Shown here in pieces: positions 14,339 through 40,420 of a stretch of 64,000 nucleotides of DNA. The translations under genes were made by a program, and so were the position numbers. Positions within the stretch are counted from its first letter, which is position 1, and each line of letters opens with the position of its first letter. The notes under the pieces were generated by a model. The model was not told the origin of the DNA. It worked only from the letters and a program-made list of their open reading frames with translations, and made no database searches. Source of the stretch: Styela clava (lineage: Eukaryota); assembly GCF_964204865.1 (NCBI RefSeq), contig NC_135259.1, positions 11,160,001 to 11,224,000 on the forward strand, in the 5' to 3' direction.

Positions 14339-14806
14339 GCGGAGGAGGGTATACATCACAATTCATATAATATTCAATTTGTGCATTTGCGTGAGAATTA
14401 CGTGAGATTGTTCAATAGTAATTTTTGGATTTGGATTTGAAGTTTTCAAATTCAGAACAACCGTTTTAATTCCGTTTAATTTTGCACCAAATGCGACGTA
14501 TGTATAAGGCCGTAACAATTGCATGCAAAATTTGTACCCCAGAAAGTTATTGTTGGACATTTTGATAAATTTATTTCAATAAAGGTTGATCTTTTAAATT
14601 TATGATTAAGGATATACTTTGAATTATCAAAATTGTCAAATATTATAAATCGAAAAAGGAATAATATGAGACTGTAAATTATGCGCTGTAATTTTCTGGT
14701 CTGTAAATGATTGAAATCATGGATTTCTAAAAGCATTGAATATTTTGTTTTCAATTATTGCAGTTATACTTATCGATATACAAAGGAATCTTGAATAAAT
14801 CTCAAA

Positions 14807-17589
14807 ATGAAGTTTCTCATTGTTGCAACAATTGCTGTGCTATTTTTGGCCGCAGAAAGTCGCAGACTGCAACCCTCTCAATGCGAATCGGGAAGAATCG
14901 TAATAGCTTTGATGGGAATCTGCCCTATGGAAGGTAATTTGAATCATTTCATTTTAGAAGAAACATTGATATTTATTGACGCAAACATTGTAAAAAAAAT
15001 CTATCATTCAGATGCGGAAATCTGCAGAGATATTTGTGACGGAACAGAAGTTAAAGATATAGAAGAATGCTCTCTCACGCCAGAATGTTGTTGGAACGGT
15101 CATCATTGCGCGATGAAAATTGTAAGATATATTTTAGACGAGCTTTTATAATTTACCACTTCAAAATTCATATTCGAAAAAATTAAAACTCACTTGGTAT
15201 ATATATTAGTAGTCATTGCAATGATTTCACGCCAACCAACTGTTTTAGTTTATCATGATTAAAAAATGATTATTCTAATTTAAATTATTGTTAATCCATA
15301 ATCAGAATTTCCATACACGACCTTACAGCTTCTGAATAAATAATGCTTATCTGATATTCGTGAAATGGCTTTGTTTTAAACAGTCGCCGTTACACAAGTT
15401 ACCATATTATCACAGTCTTGTTATTGTACATATATGTTGAAATAAGGCAAATTAAAGTTTTATTATGGTGAGATATAACACATGCAAATGCTTTATAGAT
15501 CCCATCCTATATCGTGGATAAAGACGACACAGTGGAGGAAGAAAATCATGACAAGAAAGTCGACACCTCCGGGGTACGTTTTTTCGTCTGTTGAATAATA
15601 CACCATTTTAGTTCTTAATTCTTGAACAAATAAGATACTGTCAATTTTGAAAGTAACTTAATTTAGTATGTTGCGTAGATTGGAAATTCGTGTTTGACAA
15701 GCACGTAATATCGCAAAATAAGATTTTCATTGAGTTGCTTCTTATTTACAAATTACAGAAGACGCTTTCCCGTGTAAGACGCCAGTCCTCTAAAAGAAAT
15801 GAAATTAGCATTGAAGCTGTAAGTACGGAAGTGAATAATTGTTGTTGTTTTATGATCTTTTACAATCAGACTAACCGATTAACTTGCTTATCTAACAGAA
15901 CGCCGAAGGAAAAGACGGCAGAGTTGATGCTGAATATAGAAGGGTAAATACTATTATGGTATTTTTTAAATTTTTTGAGTCACAAACACAATCCTAAATT
16001 TCAAGCGGGATAATTCTCCTGGGCAAAAAACAGTGCCAAATGATGCATACTAGCACTATTGATGCCATGGAATATTTTAAAAGGAAATTAGTTTGGAACT
16101 ACCGAATTATTTACATATCTATCAGGGTATTACAGAAACTTTCAGTAATCCCGTAATTGTATATGAAAAATTCACATCAATATTGAATACAAATATTCCT
16201 TCTATTTTCAGAACAACAGAGATTCGAAATATACGATTGGTGGAGTGAGTCGTTTATCTTCTAGTATGTTGCAATGATAGAATTTGATGCTGAGTCCGTA
16301 TGAATTTGCGAACAAGATTTTTGGCTTAATTCAAAGAATTGTTTATTACATTGTCAGATTCATATTATTGTAAATATCATCTCGCGCAGAGCGAACAGCA
16401 GTTCTACAAGAAAAACACTGTTAATAGTCAGTCACAAAATCTGTCAGCATTTTACTTGAAAAACTGATTTAGGAAGATTTCGAAAATCATAAATCGGACT
16501 TTATTGGTTGTCGGTATACCGTACAATTTTTGTATTCCCCGTTTCAATAAACTACATACTATTATATATAAGAAAATTGTTCAGATGCTAGAACGACCCG
16601 AATGTATTATGGAGACGTTTTTTCTTCTCCCTGATACGACATCATAGTCGTATATAAATAAAACATGTATAATTATTTAACCATGACCTTATTTCCTCAG
16701 CATGCAACAACTTACGGTGATTATGGAGTTCGTGGATCCTATGAAAAGGTAAGTTTAGATTTGAATTTTTAATATGGAGATATTTCGATACCACATCAGT
16801 GGATATATTTTTGTTTTTGTCACATCATGTTAACTCCTGTATCATTTCATTGACGTCAAGTTTCCTAGATGTGGGAAATTTGAGCAGCCAATCTGGTGAA
16901 AGTACGGCCTTAATTTTGTTCACGACAATACTGTTAATTTACAAACAAAAGTATTAACTTTCTCTTGGGCATCTTGCGCATCGCGCTATTTGCCTGCGTT
17001 TGACTGCTTAATTTGTTGACATTTTTAAATTTAATATTTCAGAAACTTGGCCGTGGACGCTTTGGAGTAAGCGGAGTAAGTATTTATTTTTTATTTTCTT
17101 TATTGCCGTGAAAAGCATATGTTTTCATTAGGTGTGTTTGACAAGGAACGGAGACAAGGAACATGTCTGATGTCTAAATACAGCCATGTATGTAACAAAT
17201 AAGTTATTCAAATGACTGCAATGTTTTAGGTTCTGTGTGGTCGAATCAATTGTTACAGTTTTGTCGTTGACTTTTGTGGATTGTCATTTTTCATATTGTT
17301 TCAAATTTCCTCAAACATCTTCATTTACCAAAGCGTGTAGTTAGGTATATATGAAATCAGTTTTTGGTTTCAATTAGCTGGACACAAATCTTACTGTACA
17401 AATCTTTTAGCGCAGCAAACATAGTCTAAAAAAAATCAATGCAGTTCCAATAAAAATAAAATCATTAATGTGAAGTTTGGGGCTGTATACTTAGCTGCAT
17501 TTATTTATGAATATTGAATTTACATATAACAGGGATACAGCAGATATGGGGGATCCCGCATTGGTGCAAGATACAGCTTTCCATTTTAA
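14807..17589 (+). CDS. Prepro-peptide A (195 aa): signal peptide, 8-Cys domain, acidic spacer, furin site RVRR, 83-aa cationic Gly-rich attacin/diptericin-like candidate antimicrobial peptide
   Basis: Exons 14807-14933, 15012-15121, 15499-15573, 15759-15818, 15899-15943, 16212-16244, 16701-16748, 17043-17075, 17533-17589, all GT-AG. Predicted mature part: QSSKRNEISIEANAEGKDGRVDAEYRRNNRDSKYTIGGHATTYGDYGVRGSYEKKLGRGRFGVSGGYSRYGGSRIGARYSFPF. Exon sizes and phases match paralog B. AATAAA at 17770. The gene structure is well supported; the function is inferred. Confidence 0.85.
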
Positions 17590-17927
17590 ATTATACGAAG
17601 ACGAAGATGAATGGACGAACAGATCAGCATTTCATCCATTTAATGAAATTTATCTACCTATACCCATAAACATTCATTCATTAGACACATAAATATATTC
17701 TCATTAAATTGCTAACTTCCATGTAGCTTCACATTATTCAGATTCATTTCTTTCATATAGATTGGCATCAATAAACTCTTACTCCTGCATAAATAATTTG
17801 GTGTTTAAAAAATTGGGCGTGGTATTTTGAAGAGCATACCTTTAATAGGACCAGAACCTCAAGCCGGAAACGACAGTCTATTCTATAGCTTTGCCAGTAA
17901 ATAGTTATCAGCATGTGAGGTATAAGT

Positions 17928-18025
17928 TGAGAACTCGGAGGGAGAGAGAGAGAGAGAGAGAGTCGGAGTCAAATATTTTTACAACCCGGACGCGGAGCCA
18001 ATTGTTAGAGTTCTCCGACTCCACA
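17928..18025. repeat. (GA)n microsatellite inside a small GGAGTCGGAG / CTCCGACTCC inverted-repeat element
   Basis: GA run at ~17942-17963 and inverted GAGTCGGAG motifs; related motifs at ~33373-33421. Confidence 0.5.
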
Positions 18026-21000: not shown

Positions 21001-21922
21001 ATGCAAGAAAAAGCTAGATTTGGGTAATACAAGTAAAGTAAAAAATTGATGAGTCAATGCTAATGCTCATGACAAGCCTTACTGAAATAGTTTATTATGC
21101 ATTGCGTAATTCAAATTTGTTTTCGGCTTCGTGTCGTGCAAATGCGTATTTTGAAATTTGTTTTTGGCTAAGTGTCGTGCAAATGCGTATTCTGTGGAAT
21201 TATGGTTGTTTTCAATTCACAGGAATCGAATCCTTAATTTCCCAAATTATTTCCAACAAAAATGTTCAAGATTAACTTTATTATAAATCGAAACCAATCC
21301 AGGCTGAAAACGATTGAAATGGAGCAGTTTCTATATATACAAAATAAAGAAATTGTGTTTGCGTTCACAGCAAAAAATAATACCATGATGTAATACTGGA
21401 TTGACATCAGAATAAATATATCCAAACTGCATCTCCTGCATATCGAAAATTTGTTAAGTATTGCTCAACGACCATCGGCAAATGAATAATTAGGTTTCGA
21501 CCGCATTTATAACTGAAATAAATTGTAGCTCAAATTGAAATTGCAAATATCAAAACTAATAGAAACTTATTGAATATTATAAATACCAAATTGGACCAAT
21601 TTGCAAGCGTTGAAAATTATATAAATACCAGTACTGTTTTGGTGATACACATTTTTAATTAGTGATAGCTATGATGTTACAGTGAAGCAGAAGAAATTTA
21701 TTATCACTTTACCACGAATTTATAATTGTTGATATGAAAATCTCTCGAAATTATTAGAATATTTCATGCTAAACAAACTATTAATTCTTTGTCAATTTAA
21801 AAGTAGTTCAACAGTGGCTCATGCAAAATCAAATAATCATTTATTTCTATGTTTCCATTCTTTTATTAGTCTGGCAAGTTTTTATCGTTACAACGGATTC
21901 GATCAAAACTGTTGATAACAAT

Positions 21923-24487
21923 ATGAAGATCCTACTTCTAGCGGTGGTAGGTGTGCTTTTTGTTGCAACAGAAAGTCGGAGACTCAATCCATCTCAATGC
22001 GAATTGGGTAAAATAATGATCGCTATATCTGGAATCTGCCCGCTCAAAGGTAGATCAAACATTTTTATTTATTTAAACATTTCTGGTACATAGTGAAAAT
22101 GTAAAACATACAGTGGTCAAATATTCTTTCAGATTTTCGTACCTGTGTAGATGTTTGCGATGGGAGAGAAATCACTGATTTAGTCGAATGCTCTGTTACC
22201 CCCGAATGTTGCTGGACCGGTGACCAATGTACAAGGAAAGTGGTGAGTTTTATTTACTTTTACTTTTATTTATTTCTATATAGTACAAGCACGTATTAAT
22301 AACTGATCTTTAATTTGTAAAAACATTTTTGCTCCCCTTATACGATGCGTGCTGTTTCTTGCATTCCGAAATATGAGGCATTGAATCTTTTTGATCTTAA
22401 GATTACATTCTTGAATGTCAATGAAGAATATGACGGTTCGTCTAAAAGAGATGAAGATTCAACTGAGTCGTTCCAGGTAGGAGTTTATAGCCAATTATCC
22501 TTATTTAATTGTTTTACATAATACCAGAGTCACAGTTGATCAACGTCTTCTGCAGATATTTGCATTAGGCTATCTTATTAAATTGACAAAGACAAAGCTT
22601 TTTTATTAAACTTGAAAAATCGAGCCCATAAAACAATAAAAACAGCTTTCGAAAACAGACAAAAACACAAAATATGACCGAGAAGCCTAAAACTAATACA
22701 ATGCAATCTTTTACCAACGTTTTATTTTTTTAACTAGTTTTTTGCTTTTGTTGGTTTAAAGTTAATATTCTTTCACAGAATCAAGTATCCCGAGTTAAAC
22801 GCCAGCTACCAACGCGACCGCCTACATTTATGCCACGAATAACATTTATGCCACGAATAACACCGAAAAGACCTGATATAACTATTGCAGCAGTAAGTTG
22901 ATTTAGTCCATTTTCCTGGTATATTTATATCGTATAAAAATCAATTTATTTAAAGATTGAATATAGAAACAAAAATCAAACTATTTAACGACGAATATAA
23001 ATTAGACTAAAATGTCTGTTAGGGATTTTTCGAGCTTGAGTTCGGGAGAAAATGAGTATGTTAATAATATTCACCTAATTTTTGAATTCTTACTAAAAGT
23101 AAAGTTGTGAAAAACGTTTTGAGTTGACTAATTCGAAGTTTTATTTTGTTGGAAACACGAATTCATGATAATTTCTATTTAATAAACAGATGGCTCGTGG
23201 GAAATATTTCAAAGTTGATGCCGAATACCGTGACGTAAGTTTAAATTTGTATATTTTCAAGCTAAAATCTTTATTACCTACATGCATTTATAAACCAAAT
23301 TAATAGATGAATAACAAAAATTCAAATAATTTTCAATTTTAGAGGAACGACAAATATAATTGGATGGTAGGAGGGGTAAGCACAATATAGATTATATATG
23401 TTCATTTTTTGTTTACATTTTCAAGCGCGCCATGTAACGTAACGGCAATAGTGACAATGTCCCAGTTTAGATTAGACTCCCAGATTGAACATTGGCGACA
23501 ACTGAAATTTTTATCGAGTTCCTTTTTAATATTTTGGTTTCATTATTAATTTAAATATAATGTTGTTAAAATGAGCATACTATAAGTCTAATTTATATAA
23601 AAATATTATTGGTTTTAAGCTAATATGACATTTTTTAACAAATTTATTCAGCATACATCAAATTTCGGGGACCATGGAGTTCGAGGAGCTATTGAGAGAG
23701 TAAGTTCATTACTATCACTTCAAGTTTTCAATAATCAAGGCTTGTAATAATCTTTCATGATGCAACTTCATTTGGTGGCTTGCACGATTACTATTTTAAA
23801 GAAATTTCATTCTTTCCCATACTCATTCATTAATTAAACTTTTTGTATTCGATCAGTTAATGTTGTAAAGATATATCTCATGCCAAATTGCTGACGTGCA
23901 TTACGATCGTCACTGTTTCATTAAATTTTCATATCATATTTATTTGTGTAATATGTATTTAAATTGATTCAACATTTTTTGAATTTCAGAAAGTTGGACC
24001 AGGATATTTTGGTGTAAATGCGGTAAGTTAGTACTGTTCTTTATGTTGCATTGAGTAAATACGTTAGTCGGTGTAGATGTGAAATAAAGACGCTATCAAT
24101 TTAATACAATGCAATTAGGCAATGAATTTCACTAAGAAAATGGTTTTAAATAACGATTTATACTTCAATCATATGCGACACCATTTGCATTTTGAGTTTA
24201 CCTCATTGAGATAAACTTACTACTTACTTACTAAGAAGTATTTAGCTTGTTCAATCTATATCGTATACTACAATGAATACCCAAGGTCTCCTGAGTGCAA
24301 ACAAAGCTCTAGGAATTGTGGGAATATAACTGATGTATAATTTGTATCGTATGCCGTTTCAATTTGTTCAGTGTAAGCTGTCATAAAAATGACGAGACTA
24401 ACAACAACTGTTTAATAGGGACATAGTACATTTGGAGGATCTCGAGCTGGCCTTAGTTTCAGAATACCATTTGGAAGAAAACGTTAA
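21923..24487 (+). CDS. Prepro-peptide B (217 aa), paralog of A: furin site RVKR, Pro/Arg-rich N-terminal segment, Gly-rich domain, C-terminal amidation signal F-GRKR
   Basis: Exons 21923-22049, 22133-22242, 22402-22476, 22779-22892, 23190-23234, 23343-23375, 23652-23699, 23990-24022, 24419-24487, all GT-AG. Predicted mature part: QLPTRPPTFMPRITFMPRITPKRPDITIAAMARGKYFKVDAEYRDRNDKYNWMVGGHTSNFGDHGVRGAIERKVGPGYFGVNAGHSTFGGSRAGLSFRIPF(GRKR). Confidence 0.85.
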
Positions 24488-38184: not shown

Positions 38185-40420
38185 TCTCTCGAGGTTACCT
38201 TCCTCAAATAAATATTACTCTACTGATGGAGACTTAAAATAATTTCCCAATAAATACTTTCTTGGCAGACACGAGACAATAATTAAATGATTTTTTATCA
38301 TTTATACATACATGTATTGAAAACAAATCAGTGTATCTGACGATTGCTAATTATTTTAATGATGGCTTGAAATGCTCTGTATCGATGGCAATTACGGTGC
38401 AATAGCCAGCATGAAACAAAAATACAATATTATTAAATTCTGAAACAGGATCAATGTTTTAAATATAATATCGAAAATGGCCAACCGCATTTTTAAGTGG
38501 CATATTAAGTTGAAAATAATGAAATTCGATTTCGTTTGAGTGTAATCATTAGATGCATTGCATTGGAACAAAGGTGCTCTTATATCCAGGCCGTGTCCAA
38601 ACATATCAAAATATGGCAAAACGTACCTAACAGTATATGAAACGAGAATATCGGTCAGAGACCGAAGACTTAGCGATCGGAAGTGAGGGGATCCCCCAAA
38701 ACAGCGCTCTTATTCTATAGTGACACCTTGGGTCCCATCACTAATTAAGTAATAACTCGCTAATTATACGACGTAATTATACGACCCAAAATCAATAGGC
38801 TTCTGGTCCGAGATATGATGAATGGACATGCAAAATCTGGGGCAGATTCAATTTCGCTTTCGTGAGATATCGCATGCATCTAACAGACATACATACAGAC
38901 AGACAAATATCTATCAACATTTCCACTGATTAAAATCGATCTTAACTCATTAGTATCGGTACCCGGACTGCCCTAGTCTTACTAGGTCCTGTGACAATGG
39001 TGATTCATGCGTTTTCTGCCAACGTGAATTAACATGCTAAATGATTTGACTCACAACTGCAGTATACAATAATTTACAGTGCTTTAACTTTTACAGTAAA
39101 TTACCGTATTCAGTATACACAGTGCGTCACCTGTATCGAAAAACTTCATATTCTTTCACATAGCAAGATTTCACAAAATCAAAAGGAAAGACAACCGTCA
39201 CAATTAAATTGCGTATAAAAACCGTGTTCCCATGAATAAAAATAATACTGTGAAATTTTGGATGAAATATCAGATCTCATAGGATTCATAGAAAATTTAG
39301 GAATAAATTCTCGCGAAAAATACAGTTTCCAAACACCGACAATTTCAAAGCAATTGATCCGGTAGTTGATAAGTAAAACGATGTTTTCATAACAACAAGA
39401 ACATAAAGAAAAATTCTAACAACATATCAATATAAAACGTAAAAGGTCCACTTCGTGTTCAATGAATGGAATTAGTCAATTTTGAAAATTAGGATCCGTT
39501 CTTCAAAACTGATAACTTCGTCAATAAAAAATTTTACGAAGGTTTGATTGAGTTCATACTTGCCTCAAAATGAAAAAGAAATTTGCCACTGTAAAATATT
39601 TTTACTAGTATAACCCCTTGTTGAATATTCAAGCGATTCCTTCATCAGCAACATGAATATATATATATGCTTACAAAATGTCGTACCTCGGCTTACCTCT
39701 ATGTAGTTTGTCGTATTATGTATTCATTACAGATATGAGATTTTGAATAATCAAATCACACAACCTGTTTAACGCTCTACAGTACACTAATGTTATGAAT
39801 ATCTGAAAAATCTATTCCAAATCACGGGCATAAGAGGCTTCTAAAAAGTAATAGCCCAGTCCAGCAGAGTAGAGTCCAAGTAGCAGCTTGGGGTGTCTCA
39901 TGAGCATTAAGAGTCAGAAAATAGGACTTTGCGATGATCTATTCCTAATTGAATCCTAATGAATAACGTAACACGTAAATTTTTTAGTTTCATTTCATTA
40001 CAATATTAAGTACATTCGGATAATAATACACAATAAATGCAATGGCACATTTGAGCATTATCATCGATGCTTCTATGATCTTACAACCTAGCCAAAGAAC
40101 TCGGCAAAAATGAAACTTAGGGGTTAAAAACTATATCAACGCATACCATATATATATATATATATAAATTTAATCAGTTGCCTATTTGATCACTAAAAGA
40201 TAATAATAGGTATTCCTAATACATAGATTGAAATCTTTTTTCACACATACATAAGATGGTGCATGCCCTATCAAAATATGATTTTATGTTTTAAAATATT
40301 TCTGTTGTATCCTACTTATTTGCGTGTAAAGTATGGAATGTTAAATATGAAAACGTGCCTGTGCCGAGATACGCCATAGAAAAAATGGAATAGCGAAAAT
40401 CTGAATTTAATCATGGTTCG

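What the first reader, a model, noticed from the sequence alone, without database searches (positions are those of the whole stretch)
15759..17589. Mature peptide built from three repeats of a two-microexon beta-hairpin module
Seen: all introns after exon 2 are phase 0. Exons alternate between an ~11-codon type (SSKRNEISIEA / NNRDSKYTIGG / KLGRGRFGVSG) and a 15-18-codon type (NAEGKDGRVDAEYRR / HATTYGDYGVRGSYEK / GYSRYGGSRIGARYSFPF), which align with each other and alternate polar and hydrophobic residues. Paralog B keeps the same pattern. Inference: six amphipathic beta-strands arose by tandem duplication of an exon pair. Symmetric exons would allow in-frame skipping and variable hairpin number, and the sheet may oligomerise into a membrane barrel or amyloid-like fibre.
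Basis: partly seen in the sequence, partly recalled or inferred. Interest (0 to 1): 0.75.

Follow-up and report, generated by a model that had tools for sequence, protein, structure and literature searches.

The report
Sea-squirt microexon gene for periodic glycine-rich peptide
Two neighbouring orphan genes of the sea squirt Styela clava encode secreted precursors whose glycine-, arginine- and tyrosine-rich end piece is written in six tiny in-frame exons and carries an aromatic residue every ninth position, which looks like a new insect-attacin-like defence peptide but is untested.

Summary
The exons are real. Every intron after exon 2 is phase 0, and paralog B has the same exon lengths apart from exons 4 and 9. 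Gene A is RefSeq "uncharacterized protein LOC120338146" of Styela clava.

It has no Pfam family. No relative outside the species turned up, either in a 1.84-billion-protein HMMER search with the exon-2 profile or in two word searches.

The claimed three-fold repeat is only partly borne out:
- Exon-to-exon similarity is not above chance.
- The provable repeat is shorter: an aromatic residue every 9 residues, seven times in a row (p=0.0002), also kept in B.
- Each exon pair encodes exactly 27 residues, or three such periods.
- A 27-residue super-period gets weak support (1 of 36 row orders; 23-24 of 280 partitions).

No exon skipping was seen.

Language-model neighbours are gloverin, attacin, hymenoptaecin and diptericin clusters at 0.84-0.90, which is a lead only.

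Best reading: a furin-processed, cysteine-free, beta-rich host-defence-like peptide, new as a variant, function untested.

The parts
14807..14933 (+). Gene A exon 1: start codon, signal peptide, first two Cys of an 8-Cys domain; ends in phase 1
   Evidence: joint 14933/15012 in 3 of 4 RNA runs
15012..15121 (+). Gene A exon 2: rest of the 8-Cys domain (C..C..C..CCW..C)
   Evidence: own-genome search finds A, B and one distant third copy
15499..15573 (+). Gene A exon 3: acidic linker, unconstrained between paralogs (2 of 25 residues identical, dN/dS about 1)
15759..15818 (+). Gene A exon 4: KTLSRVRR furin-type site, then the first 12 residues of the mature peptide (Q...IEA)
15899..15943 (+). Gene A exon 5 (15 codons); aromatic at position 13; ends RR at mature residue 27
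16212..16244 (+). Gene A exon 6 (11 codons); aromatic at position 7
16701..16748 (+). Gene A exon 7 (16 codons); aromatics at positions 5 and 14; ends at mature residue 54
17043..17075 (+). Gene A exon 8 (11 codons); aromatic at position 7
17533..17589 (+). Gene A exon 9 coding part (18 codons + stop); aromatics at positions 5 and 14; C-terminus F-P-F. The 3' UTR runs to about 17793, with AATAAA at 17770-17775
21923..22049 (+). Paralog B exon 1 (signal peptide + Cys), same length as in A
22133..22242 (+). Paralog B exon 2 (8-Cys domain), 53% identical to A's
22402..22476 (+). Paralog B exon 3 (linker)
22779..22892 (+). Paralog B exon 4: SRVKR|Q site, a Pro/Arg-rich insert with a perfect 18-nt tandem duplication (22824-22862), then the ...DITIAA tail
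23190..23234 (+). Paralog B exon 5 (15 codons)
23343..23375 (+). Paralog B exon 6 (11 codons)
23652..23699 (+). Paralog B exon 7 (16 codons)
23990..24022 (+). Paralog B exon 8 (11 codons)
24419..24487 (+). Paralog B exon 9: 18 codons as in A, plus G-R-K-R and stop (amidation-type tail)

Best explanation
Genes A (RefSeq LOC120338146 of the ascidian Styela clava) and B are old tandem paralogs.

Each encodes a secreted pre-pro-protein with this layout:
- a signal peptide;
- a conserved acidic 8-cysteine domain;
- an unconstrained acidic linker;
- a conserved SRV[RK]R|Q convertase site;
- a cysteine-free, Gly/Arg/Tyr-rich basic C-terminal peptide (83 residues in A).

That peptide is built on a 9-residue period marked by one aromatic residue. 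There are seven consecutive periods in A, conserved in B. Three periods (27 residues) are encoded by each pair of phase-0 microexons. This fits an ancient internal duplication whose sequence trace has almost vanished.

Inferred, not shown:
- the peptide is released by a furin-like protease (N-terminal Gln; B probably C-terminally amidated);
- it folds, perhaps only on a target surface, into a sheet of short antiparallel strands held by a cross-strand aromatic ladder;
- it acts as a host-defence (antimicrobial) peptide, a functional analogue of the insect glycine-rich attacin/gloverin/diptericin class.
For: - Splicing and expression: all eight GT..AG joints appear in RNA contigs of 4 runs from 4 studies, at exon depths up to 740.
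- Identity: P0004 = XP_077973411.1, Styela clava, equal to the exon peptides in order.
- Precursor logic: the 8-Cys part has pI 4.7 and the linker pI 5.6. The mature part has pI 9.9 with 15 Gly, 16 Lys+Arg, 11 aromatics and 0 Cys out of 83 residues. The RV[RK]R-Q site is kept in both paralogs while the exon before it keeps 2 of 25 residues.
- Constraint: dN/dS is about 0.29 for the mature part and 0.22 for signal+Cys, against about 1.0 for the linker.
- Periodicity: autocorrelation at lag 9 gives z=3.9 (family-wise 0.012) and at lag 27 z=2.4. Seven of 11 aromatics sit in one phase of period 9 (p=0.0002; periods 5-15 were tested). In B it is 6 of 11 (p=0.0012).
- Beta-type periodicity: hydrophobic-moment peak at 160 degrees, none at 100.
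- ESM-feature neighbours among named clusters: Gloverin/Attacin_C 0.90, Attacin 0.89, hymenoptaecin-like 0.86, Diptericin-D 0.84, then outer-membrane beta-barrel families at 0.77-0.81.
- Attacins are likewise pre-pro-proteins cut at RXXR, with glycine-rich domains thought to derive from one duplicated exon (PMC7924397, passages read).
Against: - No activity, tissue or induction data exist, and the run metadata are coded.
- There is no Pfam match to Attacin_C or Gloverin, even at E<=10, and no match of PF03769 in the genome.
- The ESM scores sit at or below the tool's own 0.9 lead threshold, with 151 or fewer shared features against the 170 typical of true family members. The three best hits overall are unnamed giant-virus clusters.
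- No structure model could be made.
- No single exon of A shows significant beta alternation; only exon 9 of B does (p=0.011 at 170 degrees). Junctions are not turn-rich.
- Net charge sits almost wholly in the last exon pair (+6); the first pair is neutral.
- No kappaB-like motif lies upstream of either gene.
Confidence: 0.5

Rival explanations
1. The mature peptide is three copies of a two-microexon beta-hairpin module (six strands) made by tandem duplication of an exon pair. Exon skipping would vary the number of hairpins.
For: - The exon pairs encode 27, 27 and 27+2 residues.
- Exons 6 and 8, and exons 7 and 9, have their aromatic positions in identical register.
- The reduced-alphabet module match gives p=0.006, and the natural row order is best of 36.
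- All these exons are symmetric, phase 0-0.
Against: - Same-type exons are no more alike than cross-type exons.
- BLOSUM partition tests give 54/280, 47/280 and 24/280.
- There is no DNA repeat.
- Three aromatic periods per module suggest three strands, not two.
- No skipped isoform was seen in 4 runs.
- The first 'short exon' is an arbitrary cut of a 20-codon exon.
Confidence: 0.3
2. A multi-peptide precursor. Dibasic pairs at the module borders let convertases cut the C-terminal region into three peptides of about 27 residues, one per exon pair. The last, strongly cationic one would be the active product.
For: - In A, exon 5 ends R-R, and the exon 7/8 junction reads K|K. In B the exon 7/8 junction reads R|K.
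- B ends with G-R-K-R, a classical amidation and processing tail.
- By my count from the exon peptides, the last exon pair holds 6 basic and 0 acidic residues.
Against: - The first border is not dibasic in B (R-D|R).
- K-K is a poor convertase site (recalled knowledge).
- An internal K-R near the N-terminus of A would also have to be spared.
- There is no peptide-level evidence.
Confidence: 0.12
3. A structural, adhesive or wound-sealing tunic or haemocyte protein. The regularly spaced tyrosines would be hydroxylated or cross-linked, as in DOPA proteins of ascidian blood cells and mussel foot proteins.
For: - The composition is Gly/Tyr/Arg/Ser-rich with regularly spaced Tyr.
- Contig depth in the RNA runs is very high.
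Against: - Only 8 Tyr in 83 residues.
- In B most periodic positions are Phe, Trp or Ile, which cannot be turned into DOPA.
- Convertase processing and an amidation tail are typical of bioactive peptides.
Confidence: 0.15
4. No repeat by descent. The 9-residue spacing and the equal exon sizes would reflect structural constraint or chance in a young, fast-evolving orphan gene, not duplication of exons.
For: - No significant sequence similarity between modules with BLOSUM scoring.
- No DNA similarity between exon-pair units.
- The repeat tests were chosen after looking at the data.
Against: - The aromatic phase test gives p=0.0002, about 0.002 after correcting for 11 periods.
- Seven phase-0 introns occur in a row, with two exactly equal 33-nt exons in the same register of the period.
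- The row order is best of 36.
Confidence: 0.2

Closest known systems
Insect glycine-rich antimicrobial proteins: attacin, gloverin, diptericin, hymenoptaecin (Pfam Attacin_C PF03769, Gloverin PF10793)
   Same: - Secreted pre-pro-protein cut at an RXXR site, with a cysteine-free glycine-rich mature part.
- Glycine-rich domains thought to come from a duplicated exon (PMC7924397, passages).
- B adds a Pro/Arg-rich stretch in front of the glycine-rich part, as diptericin does (the diptericin layout is recalled).
- These families are the nearest named ESM-feature clusters, at 0.84-0.90.
   Different: - No HMM match.
- A tunicate, not an arthropod.
- An N-terminal 8-Cys domain.
- Nine exons including six microexons, where attacin has few exons.
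- A strict 9-residue aromatic spacing.
Schistosome micro-exon genes (MEGs)
   Same: Secreted products encoded mostly by short symmetric exons placed between conventional end exons. MEG exons are 3-81 bp (abstract of bioRxiv 10.1101/2023.06.21.545858, seen in the listing).
   Different: - No homology, and a different phylum.
- The introns here are short (78-457 nt) and every one of these exons is phase 0.
- No exon skipping was seen. MEG variation by skipping is recalled knowledge.
Known Styela clava antimicrobial peptides (clavanins, styelins, clavaspirin)
   Same: Same species, and cationic peptides released from precursors with anionic pro-parts. These details are recalled; reviews naming S. 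clava peptides were seen only as listings.
   Different: Those are short helical peptides of about 23-32 residues (recalled). This is an 83-residue glycine-rich peptide with beta-type periodicity and no sequence relation.
Bacterial outer-membrane beta-barrel proteins and their C-terminal beta-signal; BAM inhibitors acting by beta-signal mimicry
   Same: - Amphipathic strands with aromatic residues, and a C-terminus Phi-x-Phi (F-P-F in A).
- Weak ESM neighbours: Phage_OMP, YadA_anchor, OMP_b-brl and PagP at 0.77-0.81.
- The beta-signal is GXX-Phi-X-Phi (PMC13067283, section 2.5 passage).
- L-type pyocins deliver a C-terminal peptide to BamA strand 1 (abstracts).
   Different: - The Gly stands at -8, not -6.
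- Pro at -2.
- B has Ile at -3.
- 9-residue units are too short for membrane-spanning strands.
- There is no evidence of membrane insertion.

Membership tests
Attacin/gloverin/diptericin superfamily (Pfam PF03769, PF10793) | Significant match to the family profile | tested here: not met
   hmmscan of P0004 at E<=10 lists neither family. PF03769 has no match in the genome, but that control rang nowhere, so it is uninformative.
Attacin/gloverin/diptericin superfamily (Pfam PF03769, PF10793) | Pre-pro-protein with RXXR cleavage before a Cys-free glycine-rich mature part | tested here: met
   RVRR|Q in A and RVKR|Q in B. The mature part has 15 Gly and 0 Cys in 83 residues. Cleavage itself is inferred.
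Attacin/gloverin/diptericin superfamily (Pfam PF03769, PF10793) | Infection-inducible expression and antibacterial activity | not testable with these tools
   Run metadata are coded and there is no assay.
Micro-exon genes (MEG type architecture) | Most of the coding region lies in short symmetric exons between conventional terminal exons | tested here: met
   Exons 3-8 are 75, 60, 45, 33, 48 and 33 nt, all phase 0-0, in both paralogs except for B's longer exon 4.
Micro-exon genes (MEG type architecture) | Protein variation by skipping of microexons | tested here: inconclusive
   Only consecutive-exon joints appear in 4 of 4 runs. Contigs drop rare variants.
Micro-exon genes (MEG type architecture) | Homology to the schistosome MEG superfamily | tested here: not met
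   No protein outside S. clava was found.
Tandem internal repeat of a 27-residue, two-exon module | Equal module length with exon junctions in the same register | tested here: met
   Junctions fall after mature residues 12, 27, 38, 54 and 65. Modules are 27, 27 and 27+2 residues.
Tandem internal repeat of a 27-residue, two-exon module | Sequence similarity between modules above chance | tested here: inconclusive
   Not significant with BLOSUM62 (self-alignment p=0.08). In the reduced alphabet p=0.006, with row order 1 of 36 and partitions 23 of 280.
Outer-membrane-protein beta-signal | C-terminal GXX-Phi-X-Phi (PMC13067283) | tested here: not met
   A ends ...G-A-R-Y-S-F-P-F, so Phi-x-Phi is present but position -6 holds Arg. 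B after trimming ends ...F-R-I-P-F.

The most novel reading that the evidence does not exclude
A chordate lineage (styelid ascidians) independently invented an attacin/gloverin-like, cysteine-free beta-sheet defence peptide. In this reading each 27-residue, three-strand layer is encoded by one pair of phase-0 microexons, so layers can be added or lost as exon pairs. Its OMP-like aromatic C-terminal strand would attack the outer membrane or the BAM machinery of Gram-negative bacteria by strand mimicry.
Probability: 0.1. Interest if true: 0.75.

Novelty: new variant of a known kind. Interest (0 to 1): 0.45.

Why it matters
Tunicates are the closest invertebrate relatives of vertebrates, and their known antimicrobial peptides are short helices. 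A large glycine-rich, beta-type, furin-released peptide would add a class so far described mainly in insects. It would be a clear case of convergence, or of gene birth, in a species-restricted gene.

The gene is also a compact natural example of how a periodic protein maps onto exons: a 9-residue unit, a 27-residue super-unit, 81 nt per exon pair, and every exon symmetric. That makes the link between exon duplication and repeat-protein growth directly testable by comparing styelid species.

If the peptide is not a defence molecule, the gene is still a highly expressed orphan with two independently conserved parts.

Tried and rejected
Led nowhere or rejected:
- **Pfam on single exon peptides:** 8 peptides, 0 families.
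- **Pfam on P0004:** only two sub-threshold chance rows, PGP_phosphatase and GST_C_7.
- **PDB sequence search:** one E=1 chance row.
- **Word searches with P0004**, whole and residues 113-195: only its own cluster.
- **The two other hits of the big search** (P0002, P0003): EGF/PKD-type proteins matched through cysteine bias, not kin.
- **IMG/VR scan with P0004:** 21 pattern matches, 0 confirmed.
- **Phage megablast:** no match.
- **Own-genome searches with exon 7 and exon 9 peptides:** they find only themselves and miss even B, so they say nothing about further paralogs.
- **kappaB-like motif:** 9 matches in the window, none upstream of A or B.
- **DNA repeats between exon-pair units:** only short AT-rich chance pairs.
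- **Turn enrichment at exon junctions:** absent.
- **Literature:** the locus and accession numbers occur in 0 papers, and the two searches on S. clava or glycine-rich peptides listed nothing on this gene. Supplementary tables of S. clava genome or transcriptome papers were closed and might list it.
- **Schistosome origin:** I considered this (genome size, GC, microexons) until named the species.
Full report
**Where and what.** The window is G000:C13:11160001-11224000 of a 377-Mb genome with about 33% G+C. The finding lies in the 3' two thirds of a nine-exon gene on the + strand, gene A:
- exon 1, 14807-14933
- exon 2, 15012-15121
- exon 3, 15499-15573
- exon 4, 15759-15818
- exon 5, 15899-15943
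- exon 6, 16212-16244
- exon 7, 16701-16748
- exon 8, 17043-17075
- exon 9, 17533-17589

All borders are AG/GT. A tandem paralog, gene B, lies 4.3 kb downstream at 21923-24487, with the same nine-exon plan.

**Transcription and splicing.** The look-up of sequencing runs listed ten runs holding 6-14% of the sampled words, which is what an mRNA of this gene would hold. Four more runs held 88-95%, which is genomic.

I laid four of the low-share runs from four studies on 14700-17800. Their contigs skip every one of the eight introns:
- Introns 2-7 are skipped in 4 of 4 runs, introns 1 and 8 in 3 of 4.
- In the fourth run, the loose end at intron 8 reads on into exon 9.
- Two junctions appear shifted by one or two letters in some runs, together with allelic differences at the exon end. 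They are the same junctions.

One contig of 729 letters (run X4, depth 740) carries the whole message, ending 18 nt after an AATAAA at 17770-17775. No joint skipping an exon was listed in any of the 4 runs, but contigs drop rare variants. The kind of these runs is recorded as 'RNA?', a guess. Even so, contigs that remove eight GT..AG introns can hardly be anything else, and the exon 2, 7 and 9 peptides each occur only once per gene copy in the assembly. A processed DNA copy is therefore not seen.

**Identity.**
- Exon-wise Pfam scans found nothing (8 peptides, 0 families).
- The word search refuses queries under 40 aa, and its length window would have hidden the full-length product anyway.
- I therefore gave the one HMMER job a profile of the exon-2 peptides of A and B. 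Of 1.84 billion representatives, 3 scored E<=0.001.
- Two of these are EGF/PKD proteins hit through cysteines. The third, P0001, is a truncated model of this very gene.
- Its cluster holds P0004 = XP_077973411.1, 'uncharacterized protein LOC120338146 [Styela clava]', 195 aa. P0004 equals the nine exon peptides of A in order.

The organism is the ascidian Styela clava. The joined search step was left out, and P0004 was used by id as a database record. B has no record in the collection and was handled exon by exon.

**Relatives.**
- P0004 has no Pfam family; there are two chance rows below cut-off and no Attacin_C or Gloverin row at E<=10.
- It has no PDB relative.
- In the 5.8-billion-protein word search it finds only its own cluster, both whole and as residues 113-195.
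- In the genome the 8-Cys exon finds A, B and one distant third copy on another contig (E=0.0027). That copy belongs to a different gene with thrombospondin-type repeats downstream.
- The accession numbers occur in no paper of the library.

So this is a species-restricted family as far as these collections reach. Other ascidian genomes and transcriptomes are poorly represented in them.

**Precursor anatomy.** By sequence the protein reads as follows:
- a hydrophobic signal peptide;
- an acidic domain with 8 Cys (pI 4.7), whose exon 2 is 53% identical between A and B;
- an acidic linker (pI 5.6), whose exon 3 keeps 2 of 25 residues, with dN/dS about 1;
- a conserved SRV[RK]R-Q motif;
- a basic C-terminal part: 83 residues in A, pI 9.9, with 15 Gly, 11 Arg, 5 Lys, 8 Tyr, 3 Phe and no Cys.

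Between the paralogs, dN/dS is about 0.22 for signal+Cys and about 0.29 for the mature part. dS exceeds 1, so the duplication is old and these ratios are rough.

B carries a 54-nt longer exon 4, which puts a Pro/Arg-rich stretch with a perfect 18-nt tandem duplication right after the cleavage site. B also ends in G-R-K-R-stop, the usual signal for trimming and C-terminal amidation (established knowledge). A ends F-P-F-stop.

Cleavage at RV[RK]R, an N-terminal pyroglutamate and amidation are all inferences from these motifs.

- Phase 0 for all introns after exon 2 is correct.
- The alternation of 11-codon exons (6 and 8) with 15-18-codon exons (5, 7 and 9) is correct, and identical in B.
- The first 'short exon' is the tail of the 20-codon exon 4.

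**Is there a repeat?**
- *Pairwise local alignments of exon peptides.* No same-type pair is better than chance. The best is L1-L3 in A (z=2.0), and the cross-type pairs L2-S3 (z=2.4) and, in B, L1-S3 (z=2.7) score as well or better. By contrast, orthologous exons of A and B score z=2.5-10.8.
- *Profiles of A+B columns.* Short-short p=0.34, long-long p=0.35, both together p=0.31, cross-type p=0.16.
- *Self-alignment of the mature part of P0004.* p=0.08.
- *Similarity autocorrelation.* Clear peak at lag 9 (z=3.9; only 1.2% of shuffles reach this at any lag), smaller one at lag 27 (z=2.4).
- *Cause of the lag-9 peak.* The cause is one aromatic residue every nine positions, at mature residues 25, 34, 43, 52, 61, 70 and 79. 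That is 7 of the 11 aromatics in one phase (p=0.0002 for period 9; periods 5-15 were tested and none of the others falls below 0.1). In exon terms these are position 13 of exon 5, position 7 of exons 6 and 8, and positions 5 and 14 of exons 7 and 9.
- *Paralog B.* B has Y, W, F, I, F, F, F at the same seven places (6 of 11 aromatics in phase, p=0.0012). This is not independent of A, but it shows the spacing is conserved at 49% identity.
- *Exon register.* Junctions fall after mature residues 12, 27, 38, 54 and 65. The exon pairs therefore encode 27, 27 and 27+2 residues, three periods each.

Whether a 27-residue super-period exists beyond the 9-residue one is less clear:
- With BLOSUM62, the natural grouping of the nine rows is reached or beaten by 54 of 280 partitions (A), 47 of 280 (B) and 24 of 280 (A+B).
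- In a nine-class alphabet it is 23 of 280.
- In that alphabet, the three modules in register give 19.0 class matches against 11.9 +- 2.5 (p=0.006, which includes the 9-period).
- The natural order of rows within modules is the best of 36 arrangements.

These tests were chosen after seeing the data. There is no DNA-level similarity between the exon-pair units.

My reading is that internal duplication is likely, and that an exon pair as the last duplicated unit is plausible but not proven. The basic unit is 9 residues, not a 13-14-residue strand.

**Beta structure.** What remains is indirect:
- The hydrophobic moment of the mature peptide peaks at 160 degrees (z=3.05) with nothing at 100 degrees. 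No single exon of A is significant; one exon of B is (p=0.011 at 170 degrees).
- Mean Chou-Fasman values favour turn and strand over helix.
- Exon junctions are no richer in turn formers than exon interiors (p=0.54 for A, 0.81 for B). 'One exon, one strand' is therefore not supported; Gly-Asp and Gly-Gly turns also lie inside the long exons.

A constant 9-residue spacing in an antiparallel meander would place the aromatics of neighbouring strands side by side. That would be a cross-strand aromatic ladder able to stabilise a sheet without disulfides. This is inference.

**What it resembles.** The ESM-Atlas feature search with residues 113-195 gave three unnamed giant-virus clusters of about 70 aa (0.91-0.93) as its best hits. 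Among named clusters it gave:
- Gloverin/Attacin_C 0.90
- Attacin_C/Attacin_N 0.89
- hymenoptaecin-like 0.86
- Diptericin-D 0.84
- Phage_OMP 0.81
- YadA_anchor 0.80
- OMP_b-brl 0.78
- PagP 0.77

(which count as one source of evidence.) By the tool's own figures, 0.9 is reached by 4-10% of shuffled proteins. The shared-feature counts (151 or fewer) are also below what true family members usually show. It is a lead that may be driven by composition.

It does agree with the precursor logic. Attacins are pre-pro-proteins cut at RXXR, with glycine-rich domains G1 and G2 encoded by two homologous exons that are thought to derive from one ancestral exon (PMC7924397, passages read).

Membership in that family is not supported, since there is no profile match. 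The claim is functional analogy.

The microexon layout parallels schistosome micro-exon genes (abstract of 10.1101/2023.06.21.545858), without homology and without observed skipping.

The C-terminus meets only the Phi-x-Phi half of the OMP beta-signal GXX-Phi-X-Phi (PMC13067283, section 2.5 passage). Protein antibiotics that inhibit BAM by beta-signal mimicry exist (abstracts), which keeps a bold reading open at low probability.

**Mechanism, committed.**
- *Shown:* the gene is transcribed and spliced as described, and two parts (the 8-Cys domain and the periodic peptide) are under purifying selection.
- *Inferred:* secretion; convertase cleavage at RV[RK]R; release of a basic, glycine-rich, beta-prone peptide; host-defence function. 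Overall confidence is 0.5, carried mostly by the anatomical part.

**Limits.**
- There is no structure model.
- There are no raw reads, so there is no quantification and no rare isoforms.
- B's expression is untested.
- No orthologues were available, so profile-based repeat detection could not be run.
- Run metadata are coded, so tissue and condition are unknown.
- Supplements were closed.

Noticed in passing
window 22824-22862 (paralog B exon 4): A perfect 18-nt tandem duplication (2.2 copies) doubles a six-residue motif inside a Pro/Arg-rich stretch that A lacks. It looks like a recent in-frame expansion right after the cleavage site, and is reminiscent of proline-rich antimicrobial peptides.
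   Followed up: partly
L003/L004 = G000:C1:13547000-13556999 (match at C1:13550359-13550457): A third copy of the 8-Cys CC[WF] domain (45% identity, E=0.0027). It follows a signal-peptide exon and precedes an acidic stretch and a large exon with thrombospondin type-1 repeats. The Cys domain therefore seems to be a mobile module of secreted S. clava proteins, and has no Pfam family.
   Followed up: partly
window 14752-14764: One RNA contig (run X9) carries 9 unmatched letters directly in front of 14762, just at an AG acceptor-like site (…ttgcag) 45 nt before the start codon. This could be a spliced-leader trans-splice site, which tunicates use (recalled knowledge). Other contigs start at 14773-14795.
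   Followed up: no
window 14807-15943 versus P0001: The older RefSeq model P0001 is 94% identical to P0004 over the shared part. It is truncated after exon 5, showing both allelic variation and earlier mis-annotation of the microexons. Run X1 also holds low-depth, divergent contigs over introns 5-8, from the other haplotype or from unspliced RNA.
   Followed up: partly
window 21113-21191 and 17938-17962: A 41-nt tandem repeat (1.9 copies, 92% matches) lies between the paralogs, and a (GA)12 microsatellite lies just after gene A.
   Followed up: no
window 17548-17557 and 38687-38697: Palindromic GGGGGATCCC-type matches to a kappaB-like pattern, one of them inside exon 9. There are 9 matches in the window against 2.1 expected, but most are the two strands of the same palindromes. 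They are probably meaningless.
   Followed up: no
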